The notes beneath the pieces are model-generated. The model was not told where the DNA came from. It saw only the letters and a list, made by a program, of their open reading frames with translations, and did no database searches. Made by a program: the position numbers and the translations under genes. Of a DNA stretch of 64,000 nucleotides, positions 2,184 through 64,000 are shown in pieces. Positions within the stretch are counted from its first letter, which is position 1; each line of letters starts with the position of its first letter. The stretch covers positions 434,001 to 498,000 of IMG/VR virus record IMGVR_UViG_3300033145_003233; one strand, 5' to 3'.

Positions 2184-2289
2184 TTTATTACTCCATAAAT
2201 TAAGTATTACTTACCTCAACAATATTACTACTTTAACCCTTTTTCTATATTATAGTAAAAAAGCATTTGTCTGGAAAATTATTTACTGA

Positions 2290-2318
2290 ATTATAATCTA
2301 TTTTGAGGATTTTGTCAA
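2290..2318 (-). promoter_or_regulatory. Perfect consensus sigma70 promoter driving the nuclease-helicase pair
   Basis: Minus strand TTGACA (2318-2313), 17-nt spacer, TATAAT (2295-2290), with an AT-rich UP-like tract upstream, in the intergenic gap. Confidence 0.88.
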
Positions 2319-2343
2319 GAGGAATATTGAAATAAAAAATTAA

Positions 2344-3318: not shown

Positions 3319-3366
3319 TAAGCTAACTCCCTATAAATACAACTCACTATATTATATATCGGCTTT

Positions 3367-4680: not shown

Positions 4681-4858
4681 CACGATTACACCCCCCATTA
4701 TATGCCACATCTTGCACTCTATTTATATCGACATGAATATTATCATTATATAATCTTCTAATTTCTCCCAAAATTTTATGATATGCCTCATCTGGATCTC
4801 TATAACTCAAAAATAAAGAGGCTAACAGACTAATTCTATCATTATTTTCTTTTAACAT
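4670..4858 (-). CDS. Small hypothetical protein (about 62 aa), first gene of the leftward cassette
   Basis: GGAG SD about 8 nt before ATG 4858. The track start at 4891 lies inside the palindrome/promoter. The stop overlaps the start region of the zinc-ribbon gene. Confidence 0.5.
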   Translation of the reverse strand: MLKENNDRISLLASLFLSYRDPDEAYHKILGEIRRLYNDNIHVDINRVQDVAYNGGCNRDDE

Positions 4859-4882
4859 TTCCATCTCTCCATATAAATATAA

Positions 4883-4915
4883 TAGTATCATTATAATAGT
4901 ATTATAATAATACTA
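4883..4915. promoter_or_regulatory. 33-bp imperfect palindrome, candidate operator
   Basis: TAGTATCATTATAATA-G-TATTATAATAATACTA, with 15 of 16 arm positions complementary. ATAATAGTAT is also repeated at 4879 and 4893. Confidence 0.6.
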
Positions 4916-4918
4916 CAA
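4890..4918 (-). promoter_or_regulatory. Probable sigma70 promoter for the leftward cassette
   Basis: TTGTAG (4918-4913), 17-nt spacer, TATAAT (4895-4890); overlapped by the palindrome. Confidence 0.5.
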
Positions 4919-4985
4919 TATTCCTTCTTTATTTTTAAGAAAATATCAAAAAAATTACGATATAATATAAATAATAGGAGAAAAG

Positions 4986-5135
4986 ATGGCTAAAGAAAAA
5001 AAAGATAAGAATATAGTTGTAATGGTTTCTCAGTCTATGTATAAAGATTTTATAAAATCTTGCGAGAAAGATTATCTAACAATGAGCGAATATTTAAGAG
5101 CATGTATTAGAGAAAAAATAAAAGAAAAGAAATAG
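4986..5135 (+). CDS. Ribbon-helix-helix (CopG/Arc-like) DNA-binding protein, 49 aa; not in the ORF track
   Basis: AGGAG SD at 4976-4980, ATG 4986, TAG ending 5135. MAKEKKDKNIVVMVSQSMYKDFIKSCEKDYLTMSEYLRACIREKIKEKK shows a beta strand (IVVMV), helix A and helix B (MSEYLRACI), typical of RHH proteins. Confidence 0.8.
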   Translation: MAKEKKDKNIVVMVSQSMYKDFIKSCEKDYLTMSEYLRACIREKIKEKK

Positions 5136-5142
5136 ACTATTC

Positions 5143-39400: not shown

Positions 39401-40494
39401 GACGGACTATCTATAATTTGTAAAGCATTCCATATATCATCAGACACATGAATTTGAAAATCCTCATATGGCTCTTTGGGAGCTATTACAACATCTTTAT
39501 TAGCTACAATGTAATTATCCAAAACCGTTTTTTGAGTAGCAACAAACACCTTATTTATATTAAACCTAGGATCTCCAGCATCCTCATAATTTTTATCTGG
39601 AGAAGTATAAGCATGTAACGCCATACCATTATTTAATAATGTTACAGAATTATGGAATATTTTACAAATCTTATCTGCATCCCCACCCAAACTAACAGAT
39701 GCTGTACTACCTTCAGCACAACGCATCGGCAAACCAACAGATGGAACCGATATTCCAATATCTATCTCTTCTGGAGCAACTGGGGCCTCAATACAATCCC
39801 CAGGTATACTCCATGCACCAGGGACCACATATGCTGGATCGGCTGGATTACACCTAGGGTCAATCGCCGCATGCATAGCTAGAGTTTGAGGTAAAACATT
39901 AAGATACAAATTAGTAAATTTTTTATTAGTATAATTATCTTCTTCGGAATATAAGTAAACAGGCATTTGCCTTACTGCACTTAGCTCATTACTGCCTACG
40001 ACATCTCTACCTTTAAAATTAATTGACCCTGTACCATTTTTATTAATAATAATTCTAAATAATTTGTCATTTATAGAAATAGTACTCTTACTATTTGGCT
40101 TACCCACGATATGAATAGAACATAATCCATCCATCCCAATAAAAGATGGAGTTATAGAAATTTTCTCACTAAATTCACTCGCCTCATCCTTTATGCTAAA
40201 AATGGAAGGACAAATTTGAGCAGTTTTGTAAGAACCATCTGATTGCTTTTCTTCTATATGGGCAAAAATAGAAATAGCAGCTTGAGACGAATGTTCTGGA
40301 ATATTAAGATTCATTACCCCCATACAGGATTTGTTATCCATACGCTGAAATGATCCAATATCAACCTTAACCCCATGCGTAGCATTTTCCATATTAATGC
40401 GAAATTGTTTTGCCCCAATTTCAGAAATCTCAAATTTCAAAGATTTAGCATCTTCTAATATTCCAGATGGAGGATATAATATAAGATTAGCCAT
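36499..40494 (-). CDS. Large structural protein with dispersed propeller blades and a C-terminal HFR-like domain
   Basis: LHIVWESNRG, LHLSWQSNRD and MITWHDDRDGNYNIY blades; FDAASIADRII...YDTGFIS module; YNFSIEFYHD. The start overlaps the glycosyltransferase stop by 8 nt. Confidence 0.55.
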   Translation of the reverse strand: MANLILYPPSGILEDAKSLKFEISEIGAKQFRINMENATHGVKVDIGSFQRMDNKSCMGVMNLNIPEHSSQAAISIFAHIEEKQSDGSYKTAQICPSIFSIKDEASEFSEKISITPSFIGMDGLCSIHIVGKPNSKSTISINDKLFRIIINKNGTGSINFKGRDVVGSNELSAVRQMPVYLYSEEDNYTNKKFTNLYLNVLPQTLAMHAAIDPRCNPADPAYVVPGAWSIPGDCIEAPVAPEEIDIGISVPSVGLPMRCAEGSTASVSLGGDADKICKIFHNSVTLLNNGMALHAYTSPDKNYEDAGDPRFNINKVFVATQKTVLDNYIVANKDVVIAPKEPYEDFQIHVSDDIWNALQIIDSPSVSDIYVVLFNAMIGFQRIKIVERTTDEYTGVRTLTGEVGNTNVKISNWLFCVNAVFYRSSIYPSLYLDGITIPYIRDGSGNYLQTINISVASNSKYVGLEEETYVYLIAEAVAETKSQLFFYSFSAGRTSLFDSENYGWEQLTDTGNNKNPRAYTDSINNLHIVWESNRGDICQIYYGVIGPSSPSLVSSSVSSYVDKYAEFSSTDTKSFSSIDIPSMERVVGSGSNPIPEYETSDLVPVAWAIEEDTIGSVTERSSSGDLNDLLITVNPVDEEAMAFLPLEIVTSVDNPSVLGVFPYSQFNYQMSFKLAATVNQSNSIVSDDDYNGIIIEEKEIDKLFDSWKDGFTVSIDENVDNQPVYVKNNNKFVIGKSDNIFDRIIPIIGSYKDTPDPSTERFRIEILKSDNNLKDFSLGLLFEKSYFRATNIETPSAYYDRGYGDPYTPEETEVIFTGRAKLVVLIKTEDISDERSDYIIVREFPEILEINELSSYTIILNYKSIGSDEVANVLDTYDRTYNNKFIGTITLLIDDAPKFSQSFISTLSDDYNYFDLGFGVPYGGYYVADKMSPSKFGVFENVSMNLEINDVRITSPTFAHNSAIINLPVSVQDSTELRVIDESSINLPDNTTRYNPSNNLLSLNFRAEEDIVSYASSYDLAGNNFYSVYDVEDIDKISVEFDAASIADRIIIAAGSTVLYDTGFISTPVVSQGFNFDVDIISYDIISVTVESGGDDSSWSFIVYFKKIYSNNGFLQVPITIEGINQSVDVSGGTCNDLHLSWQSNRDRYWNIFYTNSVDKLSPFRYDTKITNTESNSLRPSVSVNRNGSRMITWHDDRDGNYNIYAARSLSGYSCDEDKCERKMLDAFKDYIVECLVSFEFEVDLSGAYNFSIEFYHDSSLTNLYKTISIEGAENRWFLNGDSMSLSYDADDNLLGVVLNNGDTVSISYRPHKDDEIFDMVLYAKLLYSVT

Positions 40495-41587
40495 ATAACT
40501 CTTTCACCATCCCCATAAACATATTGCTAATTTTTGAATAATTAAATCTTTCCCTCACATAAGAATATGCTCTATCAGTTTTAATTTTTATATAATCTTT
40601 GTGATTAATTACATATCTCATAGCTTTTTGTATTTTGTTTACCTCTATAAATGCCCATTTTTTATTTCTAAATTGTGGAATATTATCCATGTTATTATGA
40701 AGAATAAATCCGCTTGGCTCAATTAGAACGGCTGTATCTTCGTTAGCATAATCTTTACACCCAGCATAATTTGTTATAATAACAGGAATCCCCAATGCCA
40801 TACATTGAAGACCAGGATACCCGAATCCTTCTCCCATAGTAGGAGAGATCAAACAATCTACAGATTTTATAAAATTTGGCAAAACCTTTTCATTAAACAC
40901 TTTATTTTCAAAAATTATAGGGGCAAATCCTTTGTTTATTCCCAATTGACCCCTAAGCTTATTAAAATATTGCTCTGCCTTTTTAGGCTTGTCAGTTTTT
41001 ACTAATAATTGGACTCCATCAGTATCTTTAAATTCCCTACCCCATGCTTCCAACAATTGTTTATATCCCTTTCTTTCTTTCCAAATACCTATGAATAAAA
41101 AAGTATATTTATCAAAATTATCTAAAGGAACGATATCTCTATGATAAGTTTCAATATCTATACAATGTGGGATATAATAAAGCGGCTTTTTAATCGTCAT
41201 ATGTGAGAAAATCTTATAATTAAATTGAGAAGGAACTATGATAGCATCGTTTTCATTAAGGATATCCACCCAATGATCGGGAGGCTGAAATGTTTCAAAA
41301 GTAGCAAAACCTATACTTCTATGATGTTTCTTTTTTACCCTTTTTTGGATATTTGGGATACAATGATATATTAAAATTCTTTCAGGATTATCCTTCTTTT
41401 TTGCCATCCTCATAAAAAATTCATATTTTTCATCACTAATAGCTGGTTTAGATGGCCTACCCCCAAAAGTAGTAATTTTGATATCAAAATAACCAGTTTT
41501 TTCTAAAGAAAAAATATAATTTTGAGCTGCTTGGGAATAACCTGACTGATTTAGGAAACATATCCAATTAAGCTTGATTTTTTCCAT
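40487..41587 (-). CDS. Glycosyltransferase, GT-B fold, family 4-like
   Basis: SGYSQAA N-terminal loop, TFETFQPP.HW...DAIIVPSQFN, YYIPHCID, FLFIGIWKERKGY, SPTMGEGFGYPGLQCMALGIPVI. Confidence 0.9.
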   Translation of the reverse strand: MEKIKLNWICFLNQSGYSQAAQNYIFSLEKTGYFDIKITTFGGRPSKPAISDEKYEFFMRMAKKKDNPERILIYHCIPNIQKRVKKKHHRSIGFATFETFQPPDHWVDILNENDAIIVPSQFNYKIFSHMTIKKPLYYIPHCIDIETYHRDIVPLDNFDKYTFLFIGIWKERKGYKQLLEAWGREFKDTDGVQLLVKTDKPKKAEQYFNKLRGQLGINKGFAPIIFENKVFNEKVLPNFIKSVDCLISPTMGEGFGYPGLQCMALGIPVIITNYAGCKDYANEDTAVLIEPSGFILHNNMDNIPQFRNKKWAFIEVNKIQKAMRYVINHKDYIKIKTDRAYSYVRERFNYSKISNMFMGMVKELYG

Positions 41588-52467: not shown

Positions 52468-55400
52468 TTAGGCAGAATATGTACCTAGGGTCTCACTCAT
52501 CATACCAGGAACTGCTTCATGCAAAGCAGTATTTATTCCCTTTGCCACCTTAGTAGAAAGGTCATTTAAACCAGATATATTTATATCAAATCGTGCATTC
52601 TCTAAAACAACAGTAACAGTATTAGCTGAAGTAGGAGCAGATATTAACCCCTTCTCTGCTTCTGAGAAAACAGGTTTTGTGGGATCAGTACCATAAACAC
52701 TTTCTGTAGGTATTAATAATTGTTGACCTCTTGCCGAAACCTCAGAAGTTACCCCTTCCCTACCAGGACGACCAACTAAATCAGCCCCCACTTTAACTTC
52801 TTGAAGAGCTTCTCTCTCAATAGCTACCTTAACTTCTTGAGGAGCTTCTCTCCCAACAGCTACCTTAACTTCTTGAGGAGCTTCTCTCCCAACAGCTACC
52901 TTAACTTCTTGAGGAGCTTCTCTCCCAACAGCTACCTTAACTTCTTGAGGAGCTTCTCTCTCTCCTGGCATTGCCTCACCTGATCTGAGTAAGCCAAACA
53001 TTTTAGGGGGCATTAATTGCTCCCATCTCCCAAACTCCTCCTCTTCTCCTATTCTTGGAGGCATCCTGCGTGTCGGCCTTATTGTTCTCCCACCACCTCT
53101 TCTACCATCGTCCCTACTTAAGCGATGTTCCATTCTTCTTTCAGAACGACTAGGACGAGGTTGATATTCTCTCCCCATCATAATATCTAACCTAGTACGT
53201 CTGCCCTCCCCTGCTTCCCTGCCTCTTGCTCCCCTACGGCGAGAAACTTTAGGCCCGACTCCTCTTTTGGCAACAATCTTTTCTTGTTCCCTTTCCCTTC
53301 TTTTCTCCCAATCAACATATCCTTCTACTTCTCTAACTGCTCCTGGAGCAGCAGGAGCCTCTGGAGGTACAACAGCAATCCTTGCAGTGTCCTCAGATGG
53401 AACTATAATCGTCTGGGGAGCAGGCATGGTGGCCACTTCTGTTCTTCCAATTTTCTCTTGCTCTATCTGAAGACGCGAACGTTGAGCAAATAGTCCCTCA
53501 CGCTCACTGTAAACAGTTTCTAATTTTCTTTTTGTATCATCACGACCTGCTTCAGCGGCCTGAGCATATTGAAATGGTGGCTGATCTTTTAACCCCTCAA
53601 TTTTACTATCATAAACTCTCCTATTCTTTTCCCACTGTTCCCTATTCGCTGCCGCATCTGCTATTAATTCATCCGAGAGATTTTTAATTATGTCCCCAGA
53701 GGCCTCTCCCTCTTTAATAGTCTTTGCATGAACCTCTCTAGACCATTCCTTACCAACTCCAACCCCCGTTTCTCTTTCCATCCTAACCAATACCCCTTCA
53801 TCTTCATCTGATCCAGATTCCTCATACTGCTTAAATGCTTGAAGATACATATATGATGGAGTCTTCTTCTCTCGTTGTGTTTTTATCTTCTTTCTTCTGA
53901 TAGCCTTTAAACTAGGCGCTCCAATAGTAAACCCTGGAGGCACACCTTCATATTTTTCTATTTCTTTTTCTTCTCTAGGCTCCTCTCGTATCATTAATGC
54001 CACTTTATCAGCTTGCTCCCTGAGTGTCTGTATCTGTGCGGCAATTTTTGCTCCTTCATCGCGAACTTTTTGTCTAGCCGCTTCGCTCTTACCAGTTAAA
54101 TCTAATTTTCCCTCTAAGGTTATAATTCCAGTATCAGGAGCATAAAGAATATTTTCAAGATGTGTCATTTCTCTATTCTTAGTCTCTATAACTTTATCTA
54201 CATCTTGAATTTCCCTAGTTTTACGCTCATATGGAGCCTGTATCTCCTTAGCTTTATCAAGATATTCAGTTGATAATCCAGAAGCAACTAAACCAGGTTT
54301 ACCACCCTCTGCAATTATCTCTTCCTCCCTACCCATAGCAAATTTACGACCAGCACTCTTACTTACTTCTTGCTCTAACTGAACCGAGGCCAATGCCATA
54401 ACACTACCCTTCTGTTCACTAGCAGATTTTTTATATTGACTAAGGAATCTGGAAATTATATTACCAAGCTCATCATCAAAATCTTCTTGAGCTATTCCTA
54501 AATCTTTTTGAGCTTTTGCGACTACCCCATGGGCAACACGAATCTCTTTTATACTCATACTGCCACTACCCTTTAATCCATCATAAACATTTTTCATATC
54601 TGAAACATTATTGGTAGCTTCCTGAACTGTCTTCCCGAATTCTCCTAATCTATCAATAGCTCCATTCATTTGATCAAAATCAAAATCTGGAGAAGTATAA
54701 ATGCCTTCCCTAATTCTATTAATTTCCTCTTTCGATAAAATCCCATCAATAGACAACTCCTGTAAAAAACTAGATGTTTTTTCTGCCTTATTTATAAAAG
54801 CCTGGGTATTAGCTACTATATCTCTTGTTGAGCTATAGACATTCCCGAAATTAACCAGCAAATCTTTGAACCTAACATCCTTTGTTTCTATTTCCATAGC
54901 ATCAACAATTGATTTTAGCTCATTATAAATTCTATCATAATTCTTTTTCCCTATATCTAAAGTAATAACAGGAACCTTACCAACTCCCTCTACAATCTCT
55001 TCTGCACTAGTTGCAGTCCCTATAATGCTCTCTAAGAAATTAGAAATCGACACTCCTGTTTCTTCAGAAAAATCATTAACACTCCTATAAAATTCAGAAA
55101 AATATTTAACAAATTGTTGCTTGTCAAGATTTAAAGCTCTAGTAGCTTCATTAATTTCTACCTCAATATTGGGGAATAACCTTGCTAGCTTATCCATAGG
55201 CAATCCTATATCTATACTCTCTACTCCCTCAGGAATATGAATAGCCGACAACATCTTCTGAGGAGATCTAATATATGTCTCGAAATCTTGATGAAACTTA
55301 ATAAGACTGCTCATCAAGACTCCTTTATCAATCTTATCGGGATCAATAATTTCCTCAAAATCCACTCTTAATTCACTAATAGTTTCATTTATTAACTTAT

Positions 55401-58400
55401 CTACTTCAGAAAAGTTTAATATATATTTTGCTGTTTTGCCAATAACTCCTATATTCTCGGCATTAATTCCCAGCAAGGTTTTCTCAACTAAATCCAAAAC
55501 CCTGTTCTTGTATTCATCAATACGAGTCTCAACAAGCCCAAGTTTACCAACTGGTTCATAAATAGCCTGACTAATAGAATCAAAAATATCCTTTATAGAA
55601 GATGTGTTAATTTCTGTTCCAGCCTCATACTCTAAATATTTTTCTACATCTTTCAGAACTATCTCTGCCCTCTCTGGTCTATTTTTAACATCAACAGCAG
55701 CAGTAAATAAATGAGGCATTTCTTTAATTATCACTGTAACTATATCAGGAGGTAAACCATCTTGTATTTGCCCACTAATGCTTGATAATATTTTACTTGC
55801 AGAAAAAACCATTTGTTCTTTAAAATCATCAAATTTTTCTCTAGGGAGTTTTATATCAGCAAAAGAATCTTTAACAATTTTACCAAAATCGACATTTAGC
55901 TCAGGGGCCTTCTCTCCAGCAAATTTATTATATAAATCAGCTATATCGGAAATTGATATACCCATTTTAAGAGACATATTACTAGCGGCCGTATTTAATT
56001 CATCAAAACTATTTACAAATTTAGCCTTGTCTGAAGCATCAACAATCATCATAGATTCGGCAAGAGAATCTAATAAATCAGTCATTTCTCCAACTGGAGT
56101 CTGAACATCAGGTTGGACATAAGACTTAGCTATATTCTGAAGAATAATAGTTGGAGTATCTGTTATTTCTATATCCACTTCTTTAATTTTTTCATAAAAT
56201 TTTTGCAAATTACCCAGTACAGCAGTAGCTTTTTCTGCTGGCACATTCATCTTATCCATATTAAACAAAACAGCCAACTCCGGAGGTTCACCAATCGTCA
56301 CATCTTCTTTTCGATATAGCAATTTTATAGCTTCTACATATGCTTTGACTCCCTTCCAATCTAATTCTCTATCATCAATAGGAACCAATATAGCATCTGA
56401 CAATTCCTCAACCTCAAACTCCACCCTAGGAATACGCTTAGTAACACCCTGCATCGTAACTTCTTCAGGCATTCCTTGAAGTAAAATATCATATCTATAT
56501 TTTTTATCAAACTCATCTTTTGCTGTTAATTCTATAAATTCAGGAACATTCTTTGCTATTAACTCAAGAGCAGAAACATTATTGGGTAATGTTATATCTG
56601 CAAGGCCCTCAAATTTGGTTTTAAGGACATTAGAAATACGCTGTGCAGAATCAACTGCCGCCTCTTTTATTTTTATAATTTGAGTATCATCTAATCCCCA
56701 ACTCTTACCCACTCTTTTTAATCTATCATCTAGGGAACTACTAAATCTAATAGCTCTAGCTAATACATCATCAAATGGCTGGCTAGTAGCTAATGAAATA
56801 TCTGTTATCTTTCTATTTAAACCACCAAAATCCGTAAGAAGTTTAGTTGTGCTTATATTCATACTAGTAGCCATCATATTTAATTCTTTTGTAAGATCTG
56901 GAGTTGGTAATTCCACTTCAAAAACCTTATCAACATTAGTTATAAGAACACTAGGCCTCCTATCAGTTCCCTCTACATCTCCGACAACATGATATGCTTC
57001 TTCTGTTAAATCCAAAATAGTAGAAACATCAACTTCTTGAGGCAACTGAGCATTTAATAATATAGAATCAAGAACCTGAGGTAATTTAAAAACAACTTCA
57101 GTAGGAAGCTTAGACCAGTCAGCTAAAATACTAAACTCAGTAACCAAATTCTTAACATACGCCTCTGCTTCTAATCCTCTTAAATTCTGCTTATCAAGAT
57201 CAAGAGCTACTTCTCTAGGAACTTGACTTAAAATTGCCGTGACAGTAGGCACATCTATAGCTCTTAATCCTATTTTTTCAGGAGCATCCTCTACTACAGT
57301 TTTTACTTTTCTCTCTATGTTTTCAGGATCTCCATATAACTCTAAAACTTCTGGTATTGATTTTATAATTATCTGCCTATCTTCTGAGGATATATCATCA
57401 AATGTTTTCTCAAAAACTTTATCAACAACTTTATTTAACTGAGGATTTATCTCATTTATAGCCATAATATTATGACTAAACGCCTTCCCCAAAGAAATAT
57501 AAATGTCCTCCATCTTTATTTCAGATGCTCTTTTTATTTTATCAATTCTACGTTCATCAATATTGAAATCGGAAAAAATATTATCTATCTTATTAGGCCA
57601 AGATTTCATAGCATCAAATATTTCATCAACAGAACGACCCGTTGCCATAGACATCTCTTTGATACTATTAAATACTGGAGAAAAATCTGATTCAAACTCT
57701 ATTTCACTATCATATCCCAAATTCCTGGCCACAACAGGAAGCATATCAGGAATTCGGATATCAGCAGTAACTTTATAAACATCTTCAAGACTCTTAATAA
57801 TCACATGAGCCTCTTCTGGCTTCTCAATCACCTTAGTTTTTAAAAGAACTTTCTCTATTTTATCCGGAAATCTCAAAACAGCAGCAGAAGGCTCTCCCCT
57901 AACCTTAGTAGGCATTGCCACAATAAGCTCTGCTACATCATAATATGCCTCTGCTTCTATATCTCTTAAATTACCATCTTTAACAGGGACCTTTATAGTT
58001 TTCGCTATTTCTGTTAATGCAAATACTGCATCAGGCATTTTTTCTAATCTACCTTCTATTGTCCCAGGTAGCTTAGAAATATCCAAATCTACTATTTGCT
58101 CTGGCTTACTCTCTGCCAGCATAGAAACAACACTTGGCAGAGCCTCATATAAAACATCTATCTCTAGATTATTTAACCCTTGGATCTGTTTTTCTATAGA
58201 TCCGAAAATAGCAGTAGATTGTTTAAAAAGAGTAGCTTGAACTTTTTTAATACTATCAGGATCTACATCCCTTATCTCAATAGAAGAAATTGCTGTATCC
58301 AACTTATTGAATAAGTTATATACATCATCATCTGAAAATTGAAGGATAGGTATCCTAATATCTCCTTCTACTTTAGCAGGTATTTTTATAACTTCTTGTA

Positions 58401-61400
58401 ATAATTTATAATATGCTGTTACTTCTAAACCTCTCATCTCCCCTTCAACAATCGGAATTCTAACTGTCTCAGCAATATCGGTTAACGCTGTTTTAACAGG
58501 AGGAACCTCTGCTAGTTCAACAGGTAACTCTCCAGGAAATGAAGAAATATCTAATAATATTGGATCAGTAAGAGGAGTTTTAGCTGTCATCGCTATAGTA
58601 TGAGGCAAAGCCCTAAAAAGAACCTCTACATCACTGTCGTCCAGCGTCTCAATCTGATCTTTTATTGATTTAAAAATAATAGATGACTGTTCTTTAATCG
58701 TCTCTTGAATATTTTTAACTTCTTCTAGATTTACTTTAGGCACATAAGTAGAGGCGATAACATAATTTAATCTTTCAAAAATTCTCATCACATCTTCTTC
58801 TGGAAATCTCAATACAGTAGGATCAACTTGCCCCTGCACAACAACAGGCATATCTACAACCTGTTCAGCTATATTATAAAATGCCTCTATTTCTAAATCA
58901 GAGAAATTCTGTCTAGCAGGAATTTGGATAGATTTAGCTATCCCCTCTAATTTAACCATAGGTTCTTCTATCTTTTCTAATTTAGCCCTCACTTCATCTG
59001 GAAAATTAGAAATATCTAACTCCACAGGTTTAGTAGGATCTTCGCTTTTAGCCATCATAGAAATAATAGTAGGTAATGCCTCAAATATTACCTTAACATC
59101 CGTATCTTTTAATCCATCAATTTCCTCATGTAATGATTCAAATATAGCTGAAGAGTGCTTTTTAAAAGTATCTTGAACCTTCGCTAAATGTGCTGGATCT
59201 ACTTTAGGAACGTATACGGAAGTAATAAGAGTATTCAATCTATTAAATAAAGCCACTACATCATCTTCTGGAAATTGCAAAACAGATGGCTTTATGTCTC
59301 CCTCTATCTGAGTAGGTAATTTTATAATCTGTTCAGCTATATCATAATATGCCTTAACCTCCACACCACTTAAATCTCCCTCCTCAACAGGAACCCTGAT
59401 AATTCTTGCTATCTCTGTTAACTTTATTTCTGCCCTTGGTATATCTTGCAAGTCAGCAGCAATACCGTCAGGAAACGAAGAAATGTCCAGCTTAACTAGT
59501 GGAGTCGGTTCGCTTTCTACCATCATAGAAACTACTTCTGGCAAAGCCTTAAAAATTACTCTTACTTGCTCATCGTTTAACCCTTCTATTTGTTGCTCTA
59601 TAGATCTAAATATCTCAGCAGATTGCTTTCTAAGAGTATCTTCAATTGCTCTTATCCTTTGAGGATCTACTTTTGGAACATACACAGAAGTAATAAGATT
59701 ATTTAACTCTGTGAAAAGATTATATACATCTTGCTCTGGGAATTGTAAGATAGAAGGCTTAACCTCTCCCTCTACTATAGTTGGTATTTTTACAAATTGC
59801 TCTGCCACCTCATAATATGCTACTACTTCCAGCCCGCTGATATCCCCCTGTTTCACAGGAACCTTAATAGTTTCCGCTATCCCTGTCAACAGGATCTCTG
59901 CATCTGGTATCCCGAGAAGCTTAGCCTTTATTTCATCAGGGAATTTAGAAATATCCAAATCAACATCTTTTTCAGGCTCACTCTTAGCCAGCATAGATAC
60001 AACATCAGGCAAAGCATCGAATATAACCTGAATATCAACATTATCCAATGCCTCTATCTGTTTATTTATAGATTCAAAAATAGCTGATGATTGTCGAATA
60101 AGAGTAGCTTGCACCTTTTTAATACTACCAGCATCAACATCGGGAATACCAACAGATAAAATAATGTCATTTAATTGCCTAAAAGTATCAAAAACACTGT
60201 CGATAGATACATCAGCGCTATCAGAAATGTCCTCTATTATCTTATAGATAGGAGAATAATCCATTACAAATTGATCACTTCTAATCCCTAAATTACTAGC
60301 AGCAGCATTAATAGATTGTTGCAATCTAATAGCCACATCTGTAGTTGCCTCCTCAACTCGAGAAAATACCTTTACTAACACATCAAATGGATTCTCTTCT
60401 ATCTCTAATTCGCTCTTAAGAATATCTCTCCATCCTGTAAAAATTAAAGCAGATTTTTCTGGCGGAATATTTTCCTCAACAATTTTACTAACAAACTGAT
60501 CCCTCCATCCTGATAATTTCATTGCAACTTCTTCTGGAGGTAATATACCATATTTAACAAATTGATTGAAAGAATCAATAGCATCATATATCTTTGTGTG
60601 AAGATAAATAGGCGGAGCTTCTTTATATACAGCTTCCTGCCTAAATGAAGAAACATAATTTTCCACAAAAGTTTCAACTCTTTCTGGAGGAAGATCTTGA
60701 TATTGCACAGTTGATCTGAATTCTTTAATTATTTCCTGAATATAAGCAGGAATATTTTCAGGAGGAATTTCATCATAATAGATATGCTGAACAAATGATT
60801 TAATATAATCGCTAATAAGGCCAGGAACTTCTTCCTCAGGTAACTTAAGGTATGTGGCTCTTTGTGCGAAAGCTTCTATAGATCCGTCTAGAAATATTTG
60901 TGCTTCTTTAGGAAGATCAGGGTACATAGCATATTGGGTAAACGATTCTTTCAGCCGTCTTAATATAACCTCAAACCTAGTTTTTGGGACATCTTCGTAA
61001 GTAGCATATTGAGTCAAGTCCTCCATAACATTTCTTATCGAAGCTGGAATATTACGTGGAGGAACTTCCCTATAATCTACTACTTGCCTTAACGCCGACA
61101 TCGAATCCTTAATTATCCCTTTAATTATCTCTGGTGGGAAATCCTCGTATGTAACACGTTGCACGAATGCCGCTTTTGAACCTCTAATAAATGCCTGAAC
61201 TTCTTTAGGAACATCTTCCTGATAAATTGCCCATTGGTCAAATGCCGTTTCAAAATTATGCATCACACCGACTACACTACGAGGAGGCAATTCCCTATAA
61301 ATAACTGACTGTCTTAAATATTTTAAATATTGTTTTACAAACCCAGGAATCTGACTGTCAGGCAACTCGCTATATAAAATATTCTGAACAAAAGATTTTT

Positions 61401-64000
61401 GAGCGCCCGTTAGTATAGCGTCCATAGTCTCTGGTATTGCATCTTTATATTCTATTGACTGAGTGAACTCATCAATAGCCCCCTCTAAGAACAAACTTAC
61501 CTCTCTAGGAAGAGTTCTATAATCACCATATTGAGTAAACGAATCTATAACCTTCCTAACTACAACATCTATTTTATTCTCTGGTATATCTGCATAAGAA
61601 AAATATTGCTCGAATTGTGTAATAACTTCTTTGATAGAAGCTGGGATTATCTTGTCAGGAAGCTCAGTGTATCTAAGATGTTGATTATATAACTCAATCG
61701 CCCCCTGTATAAAAGCAGGGACTCTATATTTGGGAAGCTGCTCATATTTCATGTGCTGAACAAAACTTGATTTAGCATCTCTAACAAAAGTTAATATTTC
61801 TTCTGGAATATCTTGGATATATACAGCTTCTTGCTTGGTGAATTTTTTAACATTCTCTACAGCCATCGTTATTTTATCAGATATCTCCGTCTGATAATCA
61901 GCATGTTGTATCATAGATGAAATAACATCGCTAATAAAGAAATCAACTTCTATTGGGAAGTCTTTATATCTGGACTCCTGCTTATATTCTTGTATCACTC
62001 CTTTTATCGTAGCAGACACATCTTCAGGAGGTATCTCTTTATATTTAACCAATTGATTTATATCATTTATGAATCCGCTAATAAAAGAAGGTATATTTTC
62101 TTCTGGCAAATCAGAATAAACTAGTCTCTGCTGATAAAATCTTAGCGTGTCTTTAACAAAAGTGCGTATTTTCTCAGATGGCATCAACGGATAAACTGCT
62201 CTTTGAGTTATAGATTCCATCAAATCAGTTACAAAGAGTTGGACTTCATCTGACACAGGCTTGTATTCAGCCTTCTGTTTGAAATCTCTTATAATATTAA
62301 TTATTTCTGCATGAACCTTCTCATGTGGGAATTGCTCATCGTCATATTCAACATACTGTTTTAATCTATCTATTGCCCCACTCATATACCCAGGAATTTC
62401 TTCTGGAGGAACCTCTCCGTAAACTACCTTCTGATTCCAAGAATTAATAATATTAGTTAACCATGCATTAGCCTTAGCCGGAGGCTTAATAGGATAATAA
62501 GCAGTTTGGGTAAAATCTGCCATAACATCCCTCACAAAGAATTGAACCTCTTGAGAAATTTTTTCTGGATATTGAGCCTCCTGTCTATAAGATTCTATAA
62601 ATTTATCAACCTCCATATTGACTTTCTCTGGAGGGATAACAGTATAAGAAGCATATTGTTTTATATTATTAATAAAATCTGTGACATACGTTGGGATCTG
62701 AGCAGGTGGTAAATCTTTATATTCCATAGATTGAGCATAAGAAGTTATAGCTCTTTTTATAAAAGCAGGTATCTTTTCAGATGGCAAGGTAGTATAAGAA
62801 ACATATTGTAAAATAGATTCTTTTACCCCCTGCACCTCTCCACTTATTTGCTTAGGAATTTCATCTCCATAAAGAGTATATTGTATAAATGAGTCCTTAA
62901 TACCCCTAAGCATAACAGGGATTTTAGAAGGCGGAATATTAACATGCTCTAGATGTGGTCTAAACTTATTGATAATATTATCATACTGAACCTCTACCTC
63001 TTCCGGCATTTTTGTAACTTCTACAATATTCCTTGTAATCCTATCTTTAGCAGCAGTTTCTCCGCTATATGCCAAAAATAAATCATCCGTATTTAATCCG
63101 AATTCAATTACTTCTCTTTTTACAGCATCTACCCCAGATGTAATCCCCTCATAATTAATCAATAACTCTTCTAGAGACAATCCCTTATCGGTGGCATACC
63201 TTTGCAAAACTTTTGTATAACCCACAATAATCTCTTCAACCCTTTTAGGAGGTTGCTCTGTTAGTTCTGCCACCCTATATATTTCAGAAACAAATCCAGA
63301 AAATATCTCTGGAACCTTCTTAGAAGGTAAACCAACTTCATCAGCAAATCTTTTAATTTCTCTAGTAAAACCAGAATAACGAGTAATAACTTCCAGTGGA
63401 GGAAGATTTTGCTCTTTAGCCACTCTCATTATCTCTTTTGTGAAACCAGTATAATAAGTCAGAACCTTTTCTGGCGGTAAATTATATTCCTTAGAAATCC
63501 TAATAATTTCTTTAGTAATATTCTGATAATAGATTTTTAACGGATCTTTTACTATTTTTTCTTCTACTGCTCCCTCAATGCCATCCATTGATACTGCCAT
63601 GCCCTGAAATAATACTCTCATAAATCTAGCTTGCTGTTTAACTTCGTCTGTAATGTTCTTTTTAAATTGAGCTTCTTTTCTTTGCGAAGAAGAAATATCT
63701 CCCTGAATTTCTCTCTGACCAGCAAGTTGAGATTGTGCTAAAAATAATGCCTTTTTTCTATGAGCCACAATCTCTGTTTCAAGTTCAACTGCCTTAGATC
63801 TCCATTTGAAAGAATCTGCACCAGCTGTCCCTAATACTCTCATGCGCTCATTTAGAGTAGTTAACATGCCCTCTTTTAATGTTGCCGCTTTCAACTCATC
63901 GTATGCCATTATCTCTCTGGTTCGAGATATTAATTCTTGCATACGAACTTGATCGATAACTTCTACGCCAATCTTTTGAATAGCTTTAAAATATTTCTCC
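52468..64000 (-). CDS. Giant repeat-rich protein, tape-measure-like, 5'-truncated (>3843 aa)
   Basis: The frame stays open from track ATG 63942 to the window edge (EKYFKAIQKIGVEVIDQVR-MQEL). It is largely helical with coiled-coil stretches, has a TMP-like C-terminal tail (TVTVVLENARFDINISG...), and lies directly upstream of the tail-tip-like genes. Confidence 0.6.
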   Translation of the reverse strand, partial: EKYFKAIQKIGVEVIDQVRMQELISRTREIMAYDELKAATLKEGMLTTLNERMRVLGTAGADSFKWRSKAVELETEIVAHRKKALFLAQSQLAGQREIQGDISSSQRKEAQFKKNITDEVKQQARFMRVLFQGMAVSMDGIEGAVEEKIVKDPLKIYYQNITKEIIRISKEYNLPPEKVLTYYTGFTKEIMRVAKEQNLPPLEVITRYSGFTREIKRFADEVGLPSKKVPEIFSGFVSEIYRVAELTEQPPKRVEEIIVGYTKVLQRYATDKGLSLEELLINYEGITSGVDAVKREVIEFGLNTDDLFLAYSGETAAKDRITRNIVEVTKMPEEVEVQYDNIINKFRPHLEHVNIPPSKIPVMLRGIKDSFIQYTLYGDEIPKQISGEVQGVKESILQYVSYTTLPSEKIPAFIKRAITSYAQSMEYKDLPPAQIPTYVTDFINNIKQYASYTVIPPEKVNMEVDKFIESYRQEAQYPEKISQEVQFFVRDVMADFTQTAYYPIKPPAKANAWLTNIINSWNQKVVYGEVPPEEIPGYMSGAIDRLKQYVEYDDEQFPHEKVHAEIINIIRDFKQKAEYKPVSDEVQLFVTDLMESITQRAVYPLMPSEKIRTFVKDTLRFYQQRLVYSDLPEENIPSFISGFINDINQLVKYKEIPPEDVSATIKGVIQEYKQESRYKDFPIEVDFFISDVISSMIQHADYQTEISDKITMAVENVKKFTKQEAVYIQDIPEEILTFVRDAKSSFVQHMKYEQLPKYRVPAFIQGAIELYNQHLRYTELPDKIIPASIKEVITQFEQYFSYADIPENKIDVVVRKVIDSFTQYGDYRTLPREVSLFLEGAIDEFTQSIEYKDAIPETMDAILTGAQKSFVQNILYSELPDSQIPGFVKQYLKYLRQSVIYRELPPRSVVGVMHNFETAFDQWAIYQEDVPKEVQAFIRGSKAAFVQRVTYEDFPPEIIKGIIKDSMSALRQVVDYREVPPRNIPASIRNVMEDLTQYATYEDVPKTRFEVILRRLKESFTQYAMYPDLPKEAQIFLDGSIEAFAQRATYLKLPEEEVPGLISDYIKSFVQHIYYDEIPPENIPAYIQEIIKEFRSTVQYQDLPPERVETFVENYVSSFRQEAVYKEAPPIYLHTKIYDAIDSFNQFVKYGILPPEEVAMKLSGWRDQFVSKIVEENIPPEKSALIFTGWRDILKSELEIEENPFDVLVKVFSRVEEATTDVAIRLQQSINAAASNLGIRSDQFVMDYSPIYKIIEDISDSADVSIDSVFDTFRQLNDIILSVGIPDVDAGSIKKVQATLIRQSSAIFESINKQIEALDNVDIQVIFDALPDVVSMLAKSEPEKDVDLDISKFPDEIKAKLLGIPDAEILLTGIAETIKVPVKQGDISGLEVVAYYEVAEQFVKIPTIVEGEVKPSILQFPEQDVYNLFTELNNLITSVYVPKVDPQRIRAIEDTLRKQSAEIFRSIEQQIEGLNDEQVRVIFKALPEVVSMMVESEPTPLVKLDISSFPDGIAADLQDIPRAEIKLTEIARIIRVPVEEGDLSGVEVKAYYDIAEQIIKLPTQIEGDIKPSVLQFPEDDVVALFNRLNTLITSVYVPKVDPAHLAKVQDTFKKHSSAIFESLHEEIDGLKDTDVKVIFEALPTIISMMAKSEDPTKPVELDISNFPDEVRAKLEKIEEPMVKLEGIAKSIQIPARQNFSDLEIEAFYNIAEQVVDMPVVVQGQVDPTVLRFPEEDVMRIFERLNYVIASTYVPKVNLEEVKNIQETIKEQSSIIFKSIKDQIETLDDSDVEVLFRALPHTIAMTAKTPLTDPILLDISSFPGELPVELAEVPPVKTALTDIAETVRIPIVEGEMRGLEVTAYYKLLQEVIKIPAKVEGDIRIPILQFSDDDVYNLFNKLDTAISSIEIRDVDPDSIKKVQATLFKQSTAIFGSIEKQIQGLNNLEIDVLYEALPSVVSMLAESKPEQIVDLDISKLPGTIEGRLEKMPDAVFALTEIAKTIKVPVKDGNLRDIEAEAYYDVAELIVAMPTKVRGEPSAAVLRFPDKIEKVLLKTKVIEKPEEAHVIIKSLEDVYKVTADIRIPDMLPVVARNLGYDSEIEFESDFSPVFNSIKEMSMATGRSVDEIFDAMKSWPNKIDNIFSDFNIDERRIDKIKRASEIKMEDIYISLGKAFSHNIMAINEINPQLNKVVDKVFEKTFDDISSEDRQIIIKSIPEVLELYGDPENIERKVKTVVEDAPEKIGLRAIDVPTVTAILSQVPREVALDLDKQNLRGLEAEAYVKNLVTEFSILADWSKLPTEVVFKLPQVLDSILLNAQLPQEVDVSTILDLTEEAYHVVGDVEGTDRRPSVLITNVDKVFEVELPTPDLTKELNMMATSMNISTTKLLTDFGGLNRKITDISLATSQPFDDVLARAIRFSSSLDDRLKRVGKSWGLDDTQIIKIKEAAVDSAQRISNVLKTKFEGLADITLPNNVSALELIAKNVPEFIELTAKDEFDKKYRYDILLQGMPEEVTMQGVTKRIPRVEFEVEELSDAILVPIDDRELDWKGVKAYVEAIKLLYRKEDVTIGEPPELAVLFNMDKMNVPAEKATAVLGNLQKFYEKIKEVDIEITDTPTIILQNIAKSYVQPDVQTPVGEMTDLLDSLAESMMIVDASDKAKFVNSFDELNTAASNMSLKMGISISDIADLYNKFAGEKAPELNVDFGKIVKDSFADIKLPREKFDDFKEQMVFSASKILSSISGQIQDGLPPDIVTVIIKEMPHLFTAAVDVKNRPERAEIVLKDVEKYLEYEAGTEINTSSIKDIFDSISQAIYEPVGKLGLVETRIDEYKNRVLDLVEKTLLGINAENIGVIGKTAKYILNFSEVDKLINETISELRVDFEEIIDPDKIDKGVLMSSLIKFHQDFETYIRSPQKMLSAIHIPEGVESIDIGLPMDKLARLFPNIEVEINEATRALNLDKQQFVKYFSEFYRSVNDFSEETGVSISNFLESIIGTATSAEEIVEGVGKVPVITLDIGKKNYDRIYNELKSIVDAMEIETKDVRFKDLLVNFGNVYSSTRDIVANTQAFINKAEKTSSFLQELSIDGILSKEEINRIREGIYTSPDFDFDQMNGAIDRLGEFGKTVQEATNNVSDMKNVYDGLKGSGSMSIKEIRVAHGVVAKAQKDLGIAQEDFDDELGNIISRFLSQYKKSASEQKGSVMALASVQLEQEVSKSAGRKFAMGREEEIIAEGGKPGLVASGLSTEYLDKAKEIQAPYERKTREIQDVDKVIETKNREMTHLENILYAPDTGIITLEGKLDLTGKSEAARQKVRDEGAKIAAQIQTLREQADKVALMIREEPREEKEIEKYEGVPPGFTIGAPSLKAIRRKKIKTQREKKTPSYMYLQAFKQYEESGSDEDEGVLVRMERETGVGVGKEWSREVHAKTIKEGEASGDIIKNLSDELIADAAANREQWEKNRRVYDSKIEGLKDQPPFQYAQAAEAGRDDTKRKLETVYSEREGLFAQRSRLQIEQEKIGRTEVATMPAPQTIIVPSEDTARIAVVPPEAPAAPGAVREVEGYVDWEKRREREQEKIVAKRGVGPKVSRRRGARGREAGEGRRTRLDIMMGREYQPRPSRSERRMEHRLSRDDGRRGGGRTIRPTRRMPPRIGEEEEFGRWEQLMPPKMFGLLRSGEAMPGEREAPQEVKVAVGREAPQEVKVAVGREAPQEVKVAVGREAPQEVKVAIEREALQEVKVGADLVGRPGREGVTSEVSARGQQLLIPTESVYGTDPTKPVFSEAEKGLISAPTSANTVTVVLENARFDINISGLNDLSTKVAKGINTALHEAVPGMMSETLGTYSA
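52793..52960 (-). repeat. 36-bp in-frame tandem repeat, 4.7 copies, encoding (REAPQEVKVAVG)n
   Basis: Unit TTAACTTCTTGAGGAGCTTCTCTCCCAACAGCTACC starts at 52793, 52829, 52865, 52901 and 52937. The three central copies are identical. Confidence 0.97.
57856..60195 (-). repeat. Five tandem ~156-aa (468-bp) repeats in the giant protein
   Basis: Units run from VxxLFxxLN...S.YVPKVDP to ...GLEVxAYY...VLQFPEDD. The span is 2340 bp, equal to 5 x 468. Confidence 0.92.
60420..63528 (-). repeat. About 40 tandem 25-aa repeats in the giant protein
   Basis: Consensus QxxxYxxLPPExIPxFIxxxIxxFx, about 32 copies from 62883 downward. It is preceded by about 8 YxGFxxEIxRxxxExxLPxxxV copies with roughly the same period. 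Confidence 0.9.

What the first reader, a model, noticed from the sequence alone, without database searches (positions are those of the whole stretch)
60420..63528. Unrecognised 25-aa helix-Pro-Pro-helix repeat, about 40 copies
Seen: QYVSYTTLPSEKIPAFIKRAITSYA, QSMEYKDLPPAQIPTYVTDFINNIK, QYASYTVIPPEKVNMEVDKFIESYR and so on. Q1, Y5, a hydrophobic-Pro at 8-9 and an amphipathic helix are conserved, while DNA identity has decayed. An N-terminal sub-block uses YxGFxxEIxR...LP. I do not recognise this repeat family. Inference: a novel solenoid or filament repeat whose copy number could tune length in 25-residue steps.
Basis: seen in the sequence. Interest (0 to 1): 0.6.

Follow-up and report, generated by a model that had tools for sequence, protein, structure and literature searches.

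The report
Repeat array inside giant phage tape-measure protein
The 25-residue repeat is real and matches no described family, but it is not a free-standing filament: it is an internal length-adding block of a 5,139-residue tail tape-measure protein of a 548-kb phage, whose relatives carry the same gene at 923 to 3,414 residues with few or none of these units.

Summary
On the minus strand, window 60340-63534 encodes about 42 tandem units of 24-27 aa: 8 'A' units, 32 'B' units and about 2 degenerate units. The lag-25 self-identity is 0.24, z about 40 against shuffles. Pfam, PHROGs and the PDB sequence search give no credible match; the ESM Atlas gives no usable hit.

The host ORF is cut by the window edge. 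The full gene is 5,139 aa, in a 547,943-bp IMG/VR virus record. It follows a tail-tube gene (PF18906) and a chaperone pair with a conserved GGGAAAC -1 frameshift site. Its N-terminus matches tape-measure profiles (phrog_794, ESM Atlas TMP clusters). So it is a tape-measure protein (TMP), longer than the 5,006-aa TMP of Thermus phage P74-26.

Syntenic relatives carry this gene at 923, 963, 1125, 1192, 1633, 1714 and 3414 aa. They share the N-terminal core and the C-terminal roughly 50 aa. B units number 0 in the four shorter ones I could read, about 3-4 in the 3414-aa protein, and 32 here.

Each unit is predicted as one amphipathic helix of about 17 residues plus a Pro-rich linker. AlphaFold2 gave no confident fold and no solenoid. 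Q1 and Y5 stay invariant while synonymous sites are saturated.

Best reading: an old, selected ruler module adding about 3.7-4 nm of tail per unit. It is a new variant of a known kind.

The parts
52468..64000 (-). The part of the tape-measure protein gene that lies in the window. The full gene is L005:468-15887 (-), equal to window-equivalent 52468-67887, 5,139 aa (P0003). Its first 1,296 codons lie beyond the window end.
   Evidence: ORF lists and translations. Residues 258-535 hit phrog_794 'tail length tape measure protein', E 1.6e-8. ESM Atlas features of residues 1-700 score 0.94-0.95 to TMP_3 and PhageMin_Tail clusters. Synteny follows the order tube, frameshifted chaperones, this gene.
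62884..63534 (-). A-block: 8 units of about 25-28 aa of the type Y-x-G-F-x-x-E-I-x-R ... L-P-P (protein residues 1452-1668). The 3,414-aa relative has the same 8 units, one to one.
   Evidence: Sequence read. The orthologous block in P0004 was read. The global alignment is collinear through residue 1658.
60490..62883 (-). B-block: 32 units (27 of 25 aa, 4 of 24, 1 of 27), protein residues 1669-2466. Consensus: Q-x-[AV]-x-Y-x-[ED]-L-P-P-E-x-[IV]-P-x-F-[IV]-x-x-x-I-x-S-F-x.
   Evidence: Segmentation and column profile. The unit HMM finds 33 units here (iE<=0.01). z is about 40 against shuffles. AlphaFold2 DSSP shows one 16-21-residue helix (six of the eight are 16-19) plus a 4-9-residue linker per unit.
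60340..60489 (-). About two degenerate terminal units (protein residues 2467-2516). They are orthologous to the last unit of the short array in the relative.
   Evidence: Sequence. Comparison with P0004 residues 1868-1910.
57808..60147 (-). C-block: 5 tandem units of about 156 aa (protein residues 2581-3360), 32-58% pairwise identity. The relative has one.
   Evidence: Lag-156 self-identity 0.305. Anchors at 2644, 2800, 2957, 3112 and 3268, against a single anchor in P0004. Unit alignment. P0003 has 624 extra aa here, equal to 4 x 156.
52793..52960 (-). Young 36-nt x 4.7 tandem repeat (97% matches), encoding a 12-aa unit near the C-terminus of the same protein.
   Evidence: Tandem Repeats Finder, L005 793-960. 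Lag-12 signal.
52471..52620 (-). The C-terminal roughly 50 aa, with a short hydrophobic strand-like motif. It is shared by all six TMP-slot proteins that I could read, from 923 to 5,139 aa. It is the likely tail-tip attachment end.
   Evidence: Alignment of the last 75 residues of the six proteins. The C-terminal roughly 60 aa are needed in TP901-1 (PMC5099701).
48487..52449 (-). The next gene downstream, 1,320 aa. It is conserved in size and position in all relatives (1,330-1,452 aa). It is probably a distal-tail or tail-tip protein, but this is inferred from position only.
   Evidence: ORF list. Gene tables of relatives. No Pfam, PHROG or NCBIfam hit.

Best explanation
[quoted passage not shown] The tail is probably non-contractile (siphovirus-like).

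Shown:
- The gene is a TMP by position, by profile similarity of its N-terminus and by its conserved ends.
- In this phage clade the TMP varies from 923 to 5,139 aa, while flanking genes keep their size.
- The extra length lies between a shared N-terminal core of about 1,100 aa and a shared C-terminal tip of about 50 aa.
- Against the 3,414-aa relative, the extra length is made of nested tandem duplications: 8 A + 32 B units of 25 aa, 5 units of 156 aa, and a further diverged module.
- Each B unit is predicted as one amphipathic helix of about 17 residues plus a Pro-rich linker of about 8 residues.

Inferred from established TMP biology (lambda gpH, TP901-1):
- The TMP lies extended inside the tail tube and sets tail length at about 0.15 nm per residue.
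- Each unit then adds about 3.7-4 nm.
- The A+B array adds about 160 nm to a predicted tail of about 0.77-0.85 um.
- Relatives without the array would have tails from about 140 nm.

Further inference, unproven:
- The unit length is close to the roughly 4.0-nm rise of one tail-tube ring.
- Q1, Y5 and P9 are held constant while silent sites are saturated.
- So each unit may be a registered 'graduation', contacting a chaperone or one tube ring, rather than plain filler.
For: Identity as a TMP:
- Residues 258-535 hit phrog_794, E 1.6e-8.
- ESM Atlas features place residues 1-700 next to TMP_3 and PhageMin_Tail clusters, 0.94-0.95.
- A Gly-rich hydrophobic stretch is present. The orthologue hits the glycine-zipper family only below its cut-off (20.6 bits against 25).
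- Gene order: tube protein PF18906 at E 7e-14 (also phrog_290, and Gordonia phage major tail proteins). Then a 144-aa ORF ending in GGGAAAC plus stop, with the next ORF in the -1 frame. This arrangement is conserved in the relative despite other nucleotide changes.
- The genome is a virus record rated 100% complete, with 29 tRNAs, 27 of them clustered.

Length series in syntenic relatives:
- 923, 963, 1125, 1192, 1633, 1714, 3414 and 5139 aa.
- The short forms align to residues 1 to about 1,100 of this protein.
- All share the C-terminal motif.

Copy number:
- B units 33 / 2-4 / 0 / 0 / 0 / 0.
- Extra segments of 732 aa (B), 624 aa = 4 x 156 (C) and 521 aa.

Selection on the units:
- Third positions are 36% identical against 32% expected.
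- Q1 uses CAA 19 and CAG 12. Y5 uses TAT 25 and TAC 7.

Structure:
- One helix per unit.
- Hydrophobic columns 13, 16, 17, 20, 21, 24 and 3' fall on one helix face.

Ruler arithmetic:
- TP901-1: 118 nm for about 810 length-determining residues, and deletions shorten the tail in proportion (PMC5099701).
- P74-26: tube rise 40.25 A, tail near 1 um (PMC10034513), TMP 5,006 aa.

An unrelated, bona fide PhageMin_Tail TMP (P0009, PF10145 E 1e-37) has its own 25-aa Pro-plus-helix repeat in at least 10 copies.
Against: - No virion has been seen, so tail length and morphology are predictions.
- The TMP profile hit is modest and falls largely on a Gly/Ala-rich segment that could add compositional bias. 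Pfam TMP models do not reach threshold and NCBIfam gives nothing.
- Absence of a sheath hit is weak evidence in so divergent a genome.
- AlphaFold2 confidence is very low, so even the helix boundaries are soft.
- The trimer test gave no verdict.
- In TP901-1, one repeat could be replaced by alanines without effect (PMC5099701). This argues against a strict sequence role for TMP repeats in general.
- The 'one unit per ring' idea rests only on arithmetic: 25 x 0.15 = 3.75 nm against 4.0 nm.
Confidence: 0.8

Rival explanations
1. After ejection, the Pro-punctuated amphipathic helices act on or in the host envelope, as apolipoprotein-type 22-mers do on lipid. The expansion would serve conduit formation across a thick or multi-layered envelope rather than setting tail length, or it might serve both.
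For: Each unit is a strongly amphipathic helix bounded by prolines. TMPs are proposed to leave the tail and help form the DNA conduit through the membrane (PMC9022992). Another TMP picked up by the repeat profile (P0007) has a sub-threshold Apolipoprotein A1/A4/E match over its own repeats.
Against: No apolipoprotein or membrane-protein family matches this protein. The units are net acidic, about -0.7 per unit. The array sits between the conserved ends, exactly where ruler length is varied experimentally in other phages. The two roles do not exclude each other.
Confidence: 0.12
2. The array is neutral filler. Slippage or unequal recombination inflated the gene, the periodicity is only a trace of that history, and any helical sequence of the same length would do.
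For: In TP901-1, a repeat replaced by 11 alanines still works, and the authors see repeats mainly as a way to gain or lose length (PMC5099701). About half of 45,500 TMPs carry tandem repeats (PMC13585406). A young 36-nt repeat in the same gene shows that duplication continues.
Against: Silent sites between units are at chance level, yet Q1 (31 of 32) and Y5 (32 of 32) persist with both synonymous codons in use, and P9 persists in about three quarters of units. That is the signature of purifying selection on each unit. The hydrophobic phase is also kept.
Confidence: 0.1
3. This is the first reader's reading: an independent solenoid or filament protein, such as a fibre or surface structure, built from helix-Pro-Pro-helix repeats.
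For: The periodic amphipathic helices resemble helical-repeat proteins. The PDB profile search weakly hits designed helical repeat proteins, E 2e-4 to 6e-4.
Against: The array is an internal part of one 5,139-aa ORF whose ends and neighbours identify it as a TMP. AlphaFold2 predicts one helix per unit and no packed fold, pLDDT 37. No natural helical-repeat family matches. No other gene of the genome carries the unit.
Confidence: 0.04

Closest known systems
Tandem repeats of siphophage tape-measure proteins (lactococcal TP901-1 and p2; Clostridium and Staphylococcus prophages): 11-, 18- or 40-aa units marked by Trp or Phe
   Same: Both are internal, helical, periodic units with conserved aromatic residues. 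Copy number varies between relatives, and the number of residues sets tail length (PMC3271669; PMC5099701).
   Different: Here the period is 25 aa. The markers are Gln1, Tyr5 and Pro9/10/14, with Phe at 16 and 24. Each unit has a Pro-rich break. Patterns of 11 or 11-11-18 do not apply. There is no detectable sequence relation.
Tape-measure protein of Thermus phage P74-26 (P74p95), the phage reported to have the longest known tail
   Same: Both are giant TMPs of the same size class, 5,006 aa against 5,139 aa, placed after the major tail protein and one or more small ORFs.
   Different: The P74-26 TMP shows no internal periodicity and sits in an 83-kb genome. The present one is built from nested repeats and sits in a 548-kb genome. 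tblastn against the phage collection, which holds P74-26, found no match to three parts covering residues 100-5139.
25-aa repeat of an unrelated PhageMin_Tail (PF10145) tape-measure protein found by the profile search (P0009, 1,663 aa)
   Same: It has the same 25-aa period. Each unit starts with Pro and continues as an amphipathic helix ending in a polar linker, in at least 10 copies.
   Different: The consensus differs ([QI]-P-A-E-A-V-E-A-H-L-R-K-V-V...). It has no Q...Y motif, and the profile match is marginal (E 9e-4). Homology or convergence cannot be decided.
Exchangeable apolipoproteins (PF01442): 22-mer amphipathic helices punctuated by proline
   Same: Tandem amphipathic helices are separated by Pro at a fixed period.
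   Different: No Pfam match in this protein. The period, context and biology all differ. This is an analogy of architecture only.
De novo designed helical repeat proteins (e.g. PDB 5cwb)
   Same: They are the only PDB sequences touched by the repeat profile, E 2e-4 to 6e-4. They too have regular helix-loop periodicity.
   Different: They are artificial two-helix units of about 40-50 aa that pack into solenoids. AlphaFold2 predicted no such packing here.

Membership tests
Phage tail tape-measure protein (functional class) | The gene lies directly after the tail-tube gene and the tail-assembly chaperone pair, which is expressed through a programmed -1 frameshift. | tested here: met
   Tube protein PF18906, E 7e-14, above cut-off. 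A 144-aa ORF ends in GGGAAAC plus stop, with the next ORF in the -1 frame. The same is seen in the relative L006. One more 139-aa ORF lies between them and the TMP.
Phage tail tape-measure protein (functional class) | Sequence similarity to known TMP families. | tested here: inconclusive
   phrog_794 at E 1.6e-8 over residues 258-535, and ESM Atlas neighbours TMP_3 and PhageMin_Tail at 0.94-0.95. But no Pfam TMP model at E<=1, nothing in NCBIfam, and no tblastn hit in 50,697 phage records.
Phage tail tape-measure protein (functional class) | Length varies between related phages while both termini are conserved. | tested here: met
   923 to 5,139 aa in eight syntenic loci. Shared N-terminal core and C-terminal motif.
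Phage tail tape-measure protein (functional class) | Mostly alpha-helical, with Gly-rich hydrophobic segments. | tested here: met
   Helices predicted throughout the 8 units folded, but at low confidence. A Gly/Ala-rich hydrophobic stretch at about residues 330-530. The orthologue hits Gly-zipper PF13488 only below its cut-off (20.6 bits against 25).
Phage tail tape-measure protein (functional class) | Tail length proportional to protein length. | not testable with these tools
   The phage is uncultured and no virion images exist. No sequencing run was listed for the stretch.
Aromatic-marker TMP repeats (11 / 11-11-18 aa, Belcaid et al. 2011; Siponen et al. 2009) | Trp or Phe recurring every 11 residues, or in an 11-11-18 pattern. 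| tested here: not met
   The period is 25 aa. The conserved aromatics are Y5, F16 and F24, so the spacings are 11, 8 and 6. The published patterns are quoted.
Described helical repeat families (HEAT, ARM, TPR, PPR, Sel1, ankyrin, apolipoprotein and others in Pfam) | Match to the family profile. | tested here: not met
   Pfam scan of residues 1316-5139 at E<=1 gave only a sub-threshold DUF6291 hit outside the array. PHROGs gave nothing. The ESM Atlas gave no usable hit.

The most novel reading that the evidence does not exclude
The 25-residue unit is a true graduation mark, with one unit per tail-tube ring (25 aa, about 3.75-4 nm, against a ring rise of about 4.0 nm). The invariant Gln and Tyr and the Pro-rich linker would dock each unit to a chaperone or to one ring of the tube lumen. 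Tail length in this clade would then change in whole-ring quanta by gain and loss of units. The recurrence of a 25-aa Pro-plus-helix repeat in an unrelated tape-measure protein would then reflect a general physical constraint on rulers.
Probability: 0.2. Interest if true: 0.7.

Novelty: new variant of a known kind. Interest (0 to 1): 0.5.

Why it matters
How the tape-measure protein sits in the tube, and whether it is read in discrete steps, is still an open question (PMC9022992).

- This clade offers a natural series. The same tail module carries rulers from 923 to 5,139 residues.
- The longest ruler is built from clean, countable units that selection has kept in register.
- That makes the step size of a molecular ruler directly measurable, by expressing tube, chaperones and rulers with different unit numbers.
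- It also predicts a 548-kb phage with a tail near 0.8 um. That is in the range of the longest tails known, here combined with one of the largest phage genomes.

If the units prove to be plain filler, the finding is simply a new, unusually large example of a known way to vary tail length.

Tried and rejected
- Family scans of the repeat: Pfam and PHROGs gave nothing. NCBIfam, run on the flanking N- and C-terminal parts of the protein (1-1450 and 4200-5139) and on neighbours rather than on the array, also gave nothing.
- tblastn of three parts of the protein against 50,697 phage records: no match.
- IMG/VR scans with the array, with the N-terminus and with a two-sequence alignment, plus one JGI metagenome scan: none found a relative.
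- Word-index protein searches on the whole protein returned only the protein itself.
- First attempt at a repeat alignment from overlapping 8-unit windows (A1). MAFFT staggered the overlapping rows, so I discarded it.
- AlphaFold2 on 8 units with a 4-row self-alignment: pLDDT 37, pTM 0.23. I used it for secondary structure only and ran no fold search, because a low-confidence model gives meaningless matches.
- Complex prediction with three copies of the 8-unit segment: no verdict (score 0.00, controls not run). This is evidence neither for nor against a trimer.
- The look-up of sequencing runs on the array: none was listed. Read laying was therefore not used, and population-level copy-number variation could not be checked.
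- Profile hits that are not relatives. P0005 and P0008 are unrelated short tandem-repeat proteins. P0006 is a TPS/YDG-repeat secreted protein.
- A sheath search (PF04984) and a terminase search (PF17289) in the genome found nothing. I read this only as weak support for a non-contractile tail.
- An assembly artefact is unlikely. Units are only about 46% identical in DNA, so the array cannot be a collapsed or inflated repeat.
- No alternative genetic code was needed. The 5,139 codons are open under table 11.
Full report
**What is there**

The finding lies in a single minus-strand ORF. Inside the window it reads 52468-63942 (3,824 aa, P0001), but its 5' end is open.

The window is bases 434001-498000 of one 547,943-bp contig. 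I fetched the neighbouring DNA. The ORF then continues to window-equivalent 67887. The full product is 5,139 aa (P0003; L005:468-15887, minus strand).

Self-identity of the translated finding region peaks at lags 25, 50 and 75 aa. Against 2000 shuffles, the lag-25 value is about 40 standard deviations above the best lag of a shuffle.

**The units**

- B units: anchoring on Q...Y gives 32 units at residues 1669-2466. 27 are 25 aa, 4 are 24 aa and 1 is 27 aa.
L-P-P) lie before them, at residues 1452-1668.
- About two degenerate units follow.
- B consensus: Q-x-[AV]-x-Y-x-[ED]-L-P-P-E-x-[IV]-P-x-F-[IV]-x-x-x-I-x-S-F-x. Q1 is present in 31 of 32 units and Y5 in 32 of 32.
- Mean amino-acid identity between units is 26%. 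It is higher at lags of 4 and 8 units, so there is a weak super-repeat of about 100 aa.
- At DNA level no tandem repeat is detectable. Codon-aligned identity is 46%. Third positions are at chance, 36% against 32% expected.
- Q1 and Y5 each use both synonymous codons.

The array is therefore old, and its motif is kept by selection on the protein.

**What the protein is**

The repeat matches no described family. I checked Pfam, PHROGs, a PDB profile search and the ESM Atlas.

The N-terminal part, which lies outside the window, identifies the protein:
- Residues 258-535 match phrog_794, 'tail length tape measure protein', at E 1.6e-8.
- Language-model features of residues 1-700 sit next to TMP_3 and PhageMin_Tail clusters.
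- There is a Gly-rich hydrophobic stretch, typical of tape-measure proteins.

The gene order upstream also fits:
- A tail-tube protein, PF18906 at E 7e-14. It is also similar to Gordonia siphophage major tail proteins.
- A 144-aa ORF that ends in the slippery heptamer GGGAAAC followed directly by a stop.
- A 74-codon ORF in the -1 frame.
- A 139-aa ORF.

The heptamer, the stop and the -1 ORF are conserved in the one close relative, although the stop codon and nearby bases differ. This is the arrangement of the lambda G / G-T tail-assembly chaperones. That comparison rests on established knowledge, not on a test run here.

The contig is an IMG/VR virus record rated 100% complete. It carries 29 tRNA genes, 27 of them in one 12-kb cluster. 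No sheath family was found.

**Relatives**

A profile of the repeat, searched against 1.84 billion representative proteins, gave six hits at E<=1e-3. Only one is a true orthologue: P0004, 3,414 aa, on a 123-kb metagenomic contig with the same gene order.

The global alignment of the two proteins shows:
- They are collinear through the N-terminal 1,658 residues, including all eight A units, and again through the C-terminal roughly 1,240 residues.
- The present protein has an extra 732 aa inside the B array, about 29 units.
- It has an extra 624 aa in the second array, exactly four 156-aa units. The counts are five against one.
- It has a further 521-aa segment, which is a diverged copy of the same larger module.

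The tube protein has 263 homologues in the protein collection. Look-ups of seven of them returned gene tables, and six showed the same tail module:

| Locus or sample | Gene in the tape-measure slot |
|---|---|
| L010 | 923 aa |
| L008 | 963 aa |
| L009 | 1,125 aa |
| JGI 3300072015 (no DNA served) | 1,192 aa |
| L012 | 1,633 aa |
| ERZ23486238 (no DNA served) | 1,714 aa |

The downstream neighbour stays at 1,330-1,452 aa in all of them. In the seventh look-up (L011) synteny breaks after the tube gene.

The four short proteins with DNA available align to residues 1 to about 1,100 of the present protein and contain no B unit. All six readable proteins share a short motif in the last roughly 50 residues.

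The clade therefore has a conserved core and tip. The middle varies more than fivefold. The 25-aa array is one of the blocks that fill the middle in the two longest versions.

By parsimony the long forms are derived. I did not test this on a rooted tree.

**Structure**

AlphaFold2 on eight units, with the other three 8-unit blocks as alignment, gave no confident fold (pLDDT 37, pTM 0.23). Its secondary structure is regular: eight helices of 16-21 residues, one per unit, separated by non-helical stretches of 4-9 residues at the Y-x-E-L-P-P-E segment.

Mean hydrophobicity per column places columns 13, 16, 17, 20, 21, 24 and 3' on one face of that helix.

A three-copy complex prediction gave no verdict. 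So there is no computational support for a solenoid. The low monomer confidence fits a protein that is kept extended by chaperones and the tube, but it does not prove this.

**How it most likely works**

Published work shows the following:
- Deleting or duplicating TMP segments changes tail length in proportion, at about 0.146-0.15 nm per residue.
- Repeats are a natural substrate for such change.
- The termini are the indispensable parts (PMC3271669; PMC5099701; PMC9022992).

Applied here, these figures give:
- one unit adds about 3.7-4 nm;
- the A+B array adds about 160 nm;
- the whole protein gives about 0.77 um, or at least 0.8 um if scaled on P74-26;
- the shortest relatives would have tails of about 140 nm.

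P74-26 has a 5,006-aa TMP and a tail described as nearly 1 um.

The unit length is close to the 40.25-A rise of a tail-tube ring. An unrelated PhageMin_Tail TMP caught by the profile carries its own 25-aa Pro-plus-helix repeat. Together with the selection on Q1, Y5 and P9, this suggests that units may be registered with rings or chaperones. I rate that at about 0.2. It rests on arithmetic and one parallel case.

**Comparison with what is known**

Tandem repeats in TMPs are well known. About half of 45,500 TMPs have them (PMC13585406). The described units are 11, 18 or 40 aa with Trp or Phe markers.

This unit differs in period and in motif. It also has a proline break, and no sequence relation to the described units is detectable. 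The other giant TMP, that of P74-26, has no periodicity at all.

I therefore file this as a new variant of a known kind. It is a member of the functional class 'tape-measure protein'. It is not a member of the aromatic 11/18-aa repeat type, nor of any Pfam helical-repeat family.

**Limits**

- No virion, expression or read data could be obtained. For sequencing runs, none was listed.
- Two relatives were available only as gene tables.
- The direction of change, expansion or loss, is inferred rather than tested.
- The TMP assignment rests on context plus modest profile similarity.

Noticed in passing
L001:10137-11162 (-), window-equivalent 73137-74162, outside the window: A full-length actin-fold protein of the Volactin family (PF25216, E 4e-59) sits in the head-tail structural block. 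It is conserved at the same place in all relatives looked up. In one relative (L011:5073-7253) it is interrupted by an intein with a LAGLIDADG endonuclease.
   Followed up: partly
L001:5693-5684 (-) and L006:612-622 (+): A conserved GGGAAAC heptamer lies immediately before the stop of the 144-aa ORF, with a roughly 72-74-codon ORF in the -1 frame. This is a candidate programmed frameshift of tail-assembly chaperones. Unusually, a third small ORF (139 aa) lies between it and the tape-measure gene.
   Followed up: partly
window 52793-52960 (-): A nearly perfect 36-nt x 4.7 tandem repeat (97% matches) near the 3' end of the same gene encodes a 12-aa unit in an Arg/Glu/Pro-rich region. It is a young duplication, in contrast with the old 25-aa array.
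   Followed up: partly
window 5143-52449 (-): A run of very large genes lies downstream of the tape measure (1,320, 1,119, 1,078, 1,331, 899, 1,971, 1,958, 2,035 and 1,039 aa). They carry Kelch, FG-GAP, fn3, WD40-like and Laminin_G_3 domains and an InlB B-repeat. They are presumably tail-tip and fibre or adhesin proteins. A GT4 glycosyltransferase (40487-41587) is embedded among them.
   Followed up: partly
L002:3193-4125 (-), outside the window: A patatin-like phospholipase is 47-50% identical to those of Wolbachia phage WO, and 40% identical to one in a 635-kb uncultured phage (LR745206.1).
   Followed up: no
G000 contig 171686-183550: 27 of the 29 tRNA genes lie in one cluster of about 12 kb on one strand. 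No suppressor tRNA is seen, and the late genes are open under table 11.
   Followed up: no
window 2-4710 (-): At the low end of the window lie non-structural genes: a ResIII/DEAD helicase, a DUF4238 protein, and a protein with four DUF4379 treble-clef zinc-finger repeats (E 1e-66).
   Followed up: no
P0004 residues about 370-620 (L006): The 3,414-aa relative has its own internal duplication in the Gly-rich hydrophobic region. A stretch of over 100 aa occurs twice almost identically, so different parts of the ruler have expanded in different lineages.
   Followed up: partly
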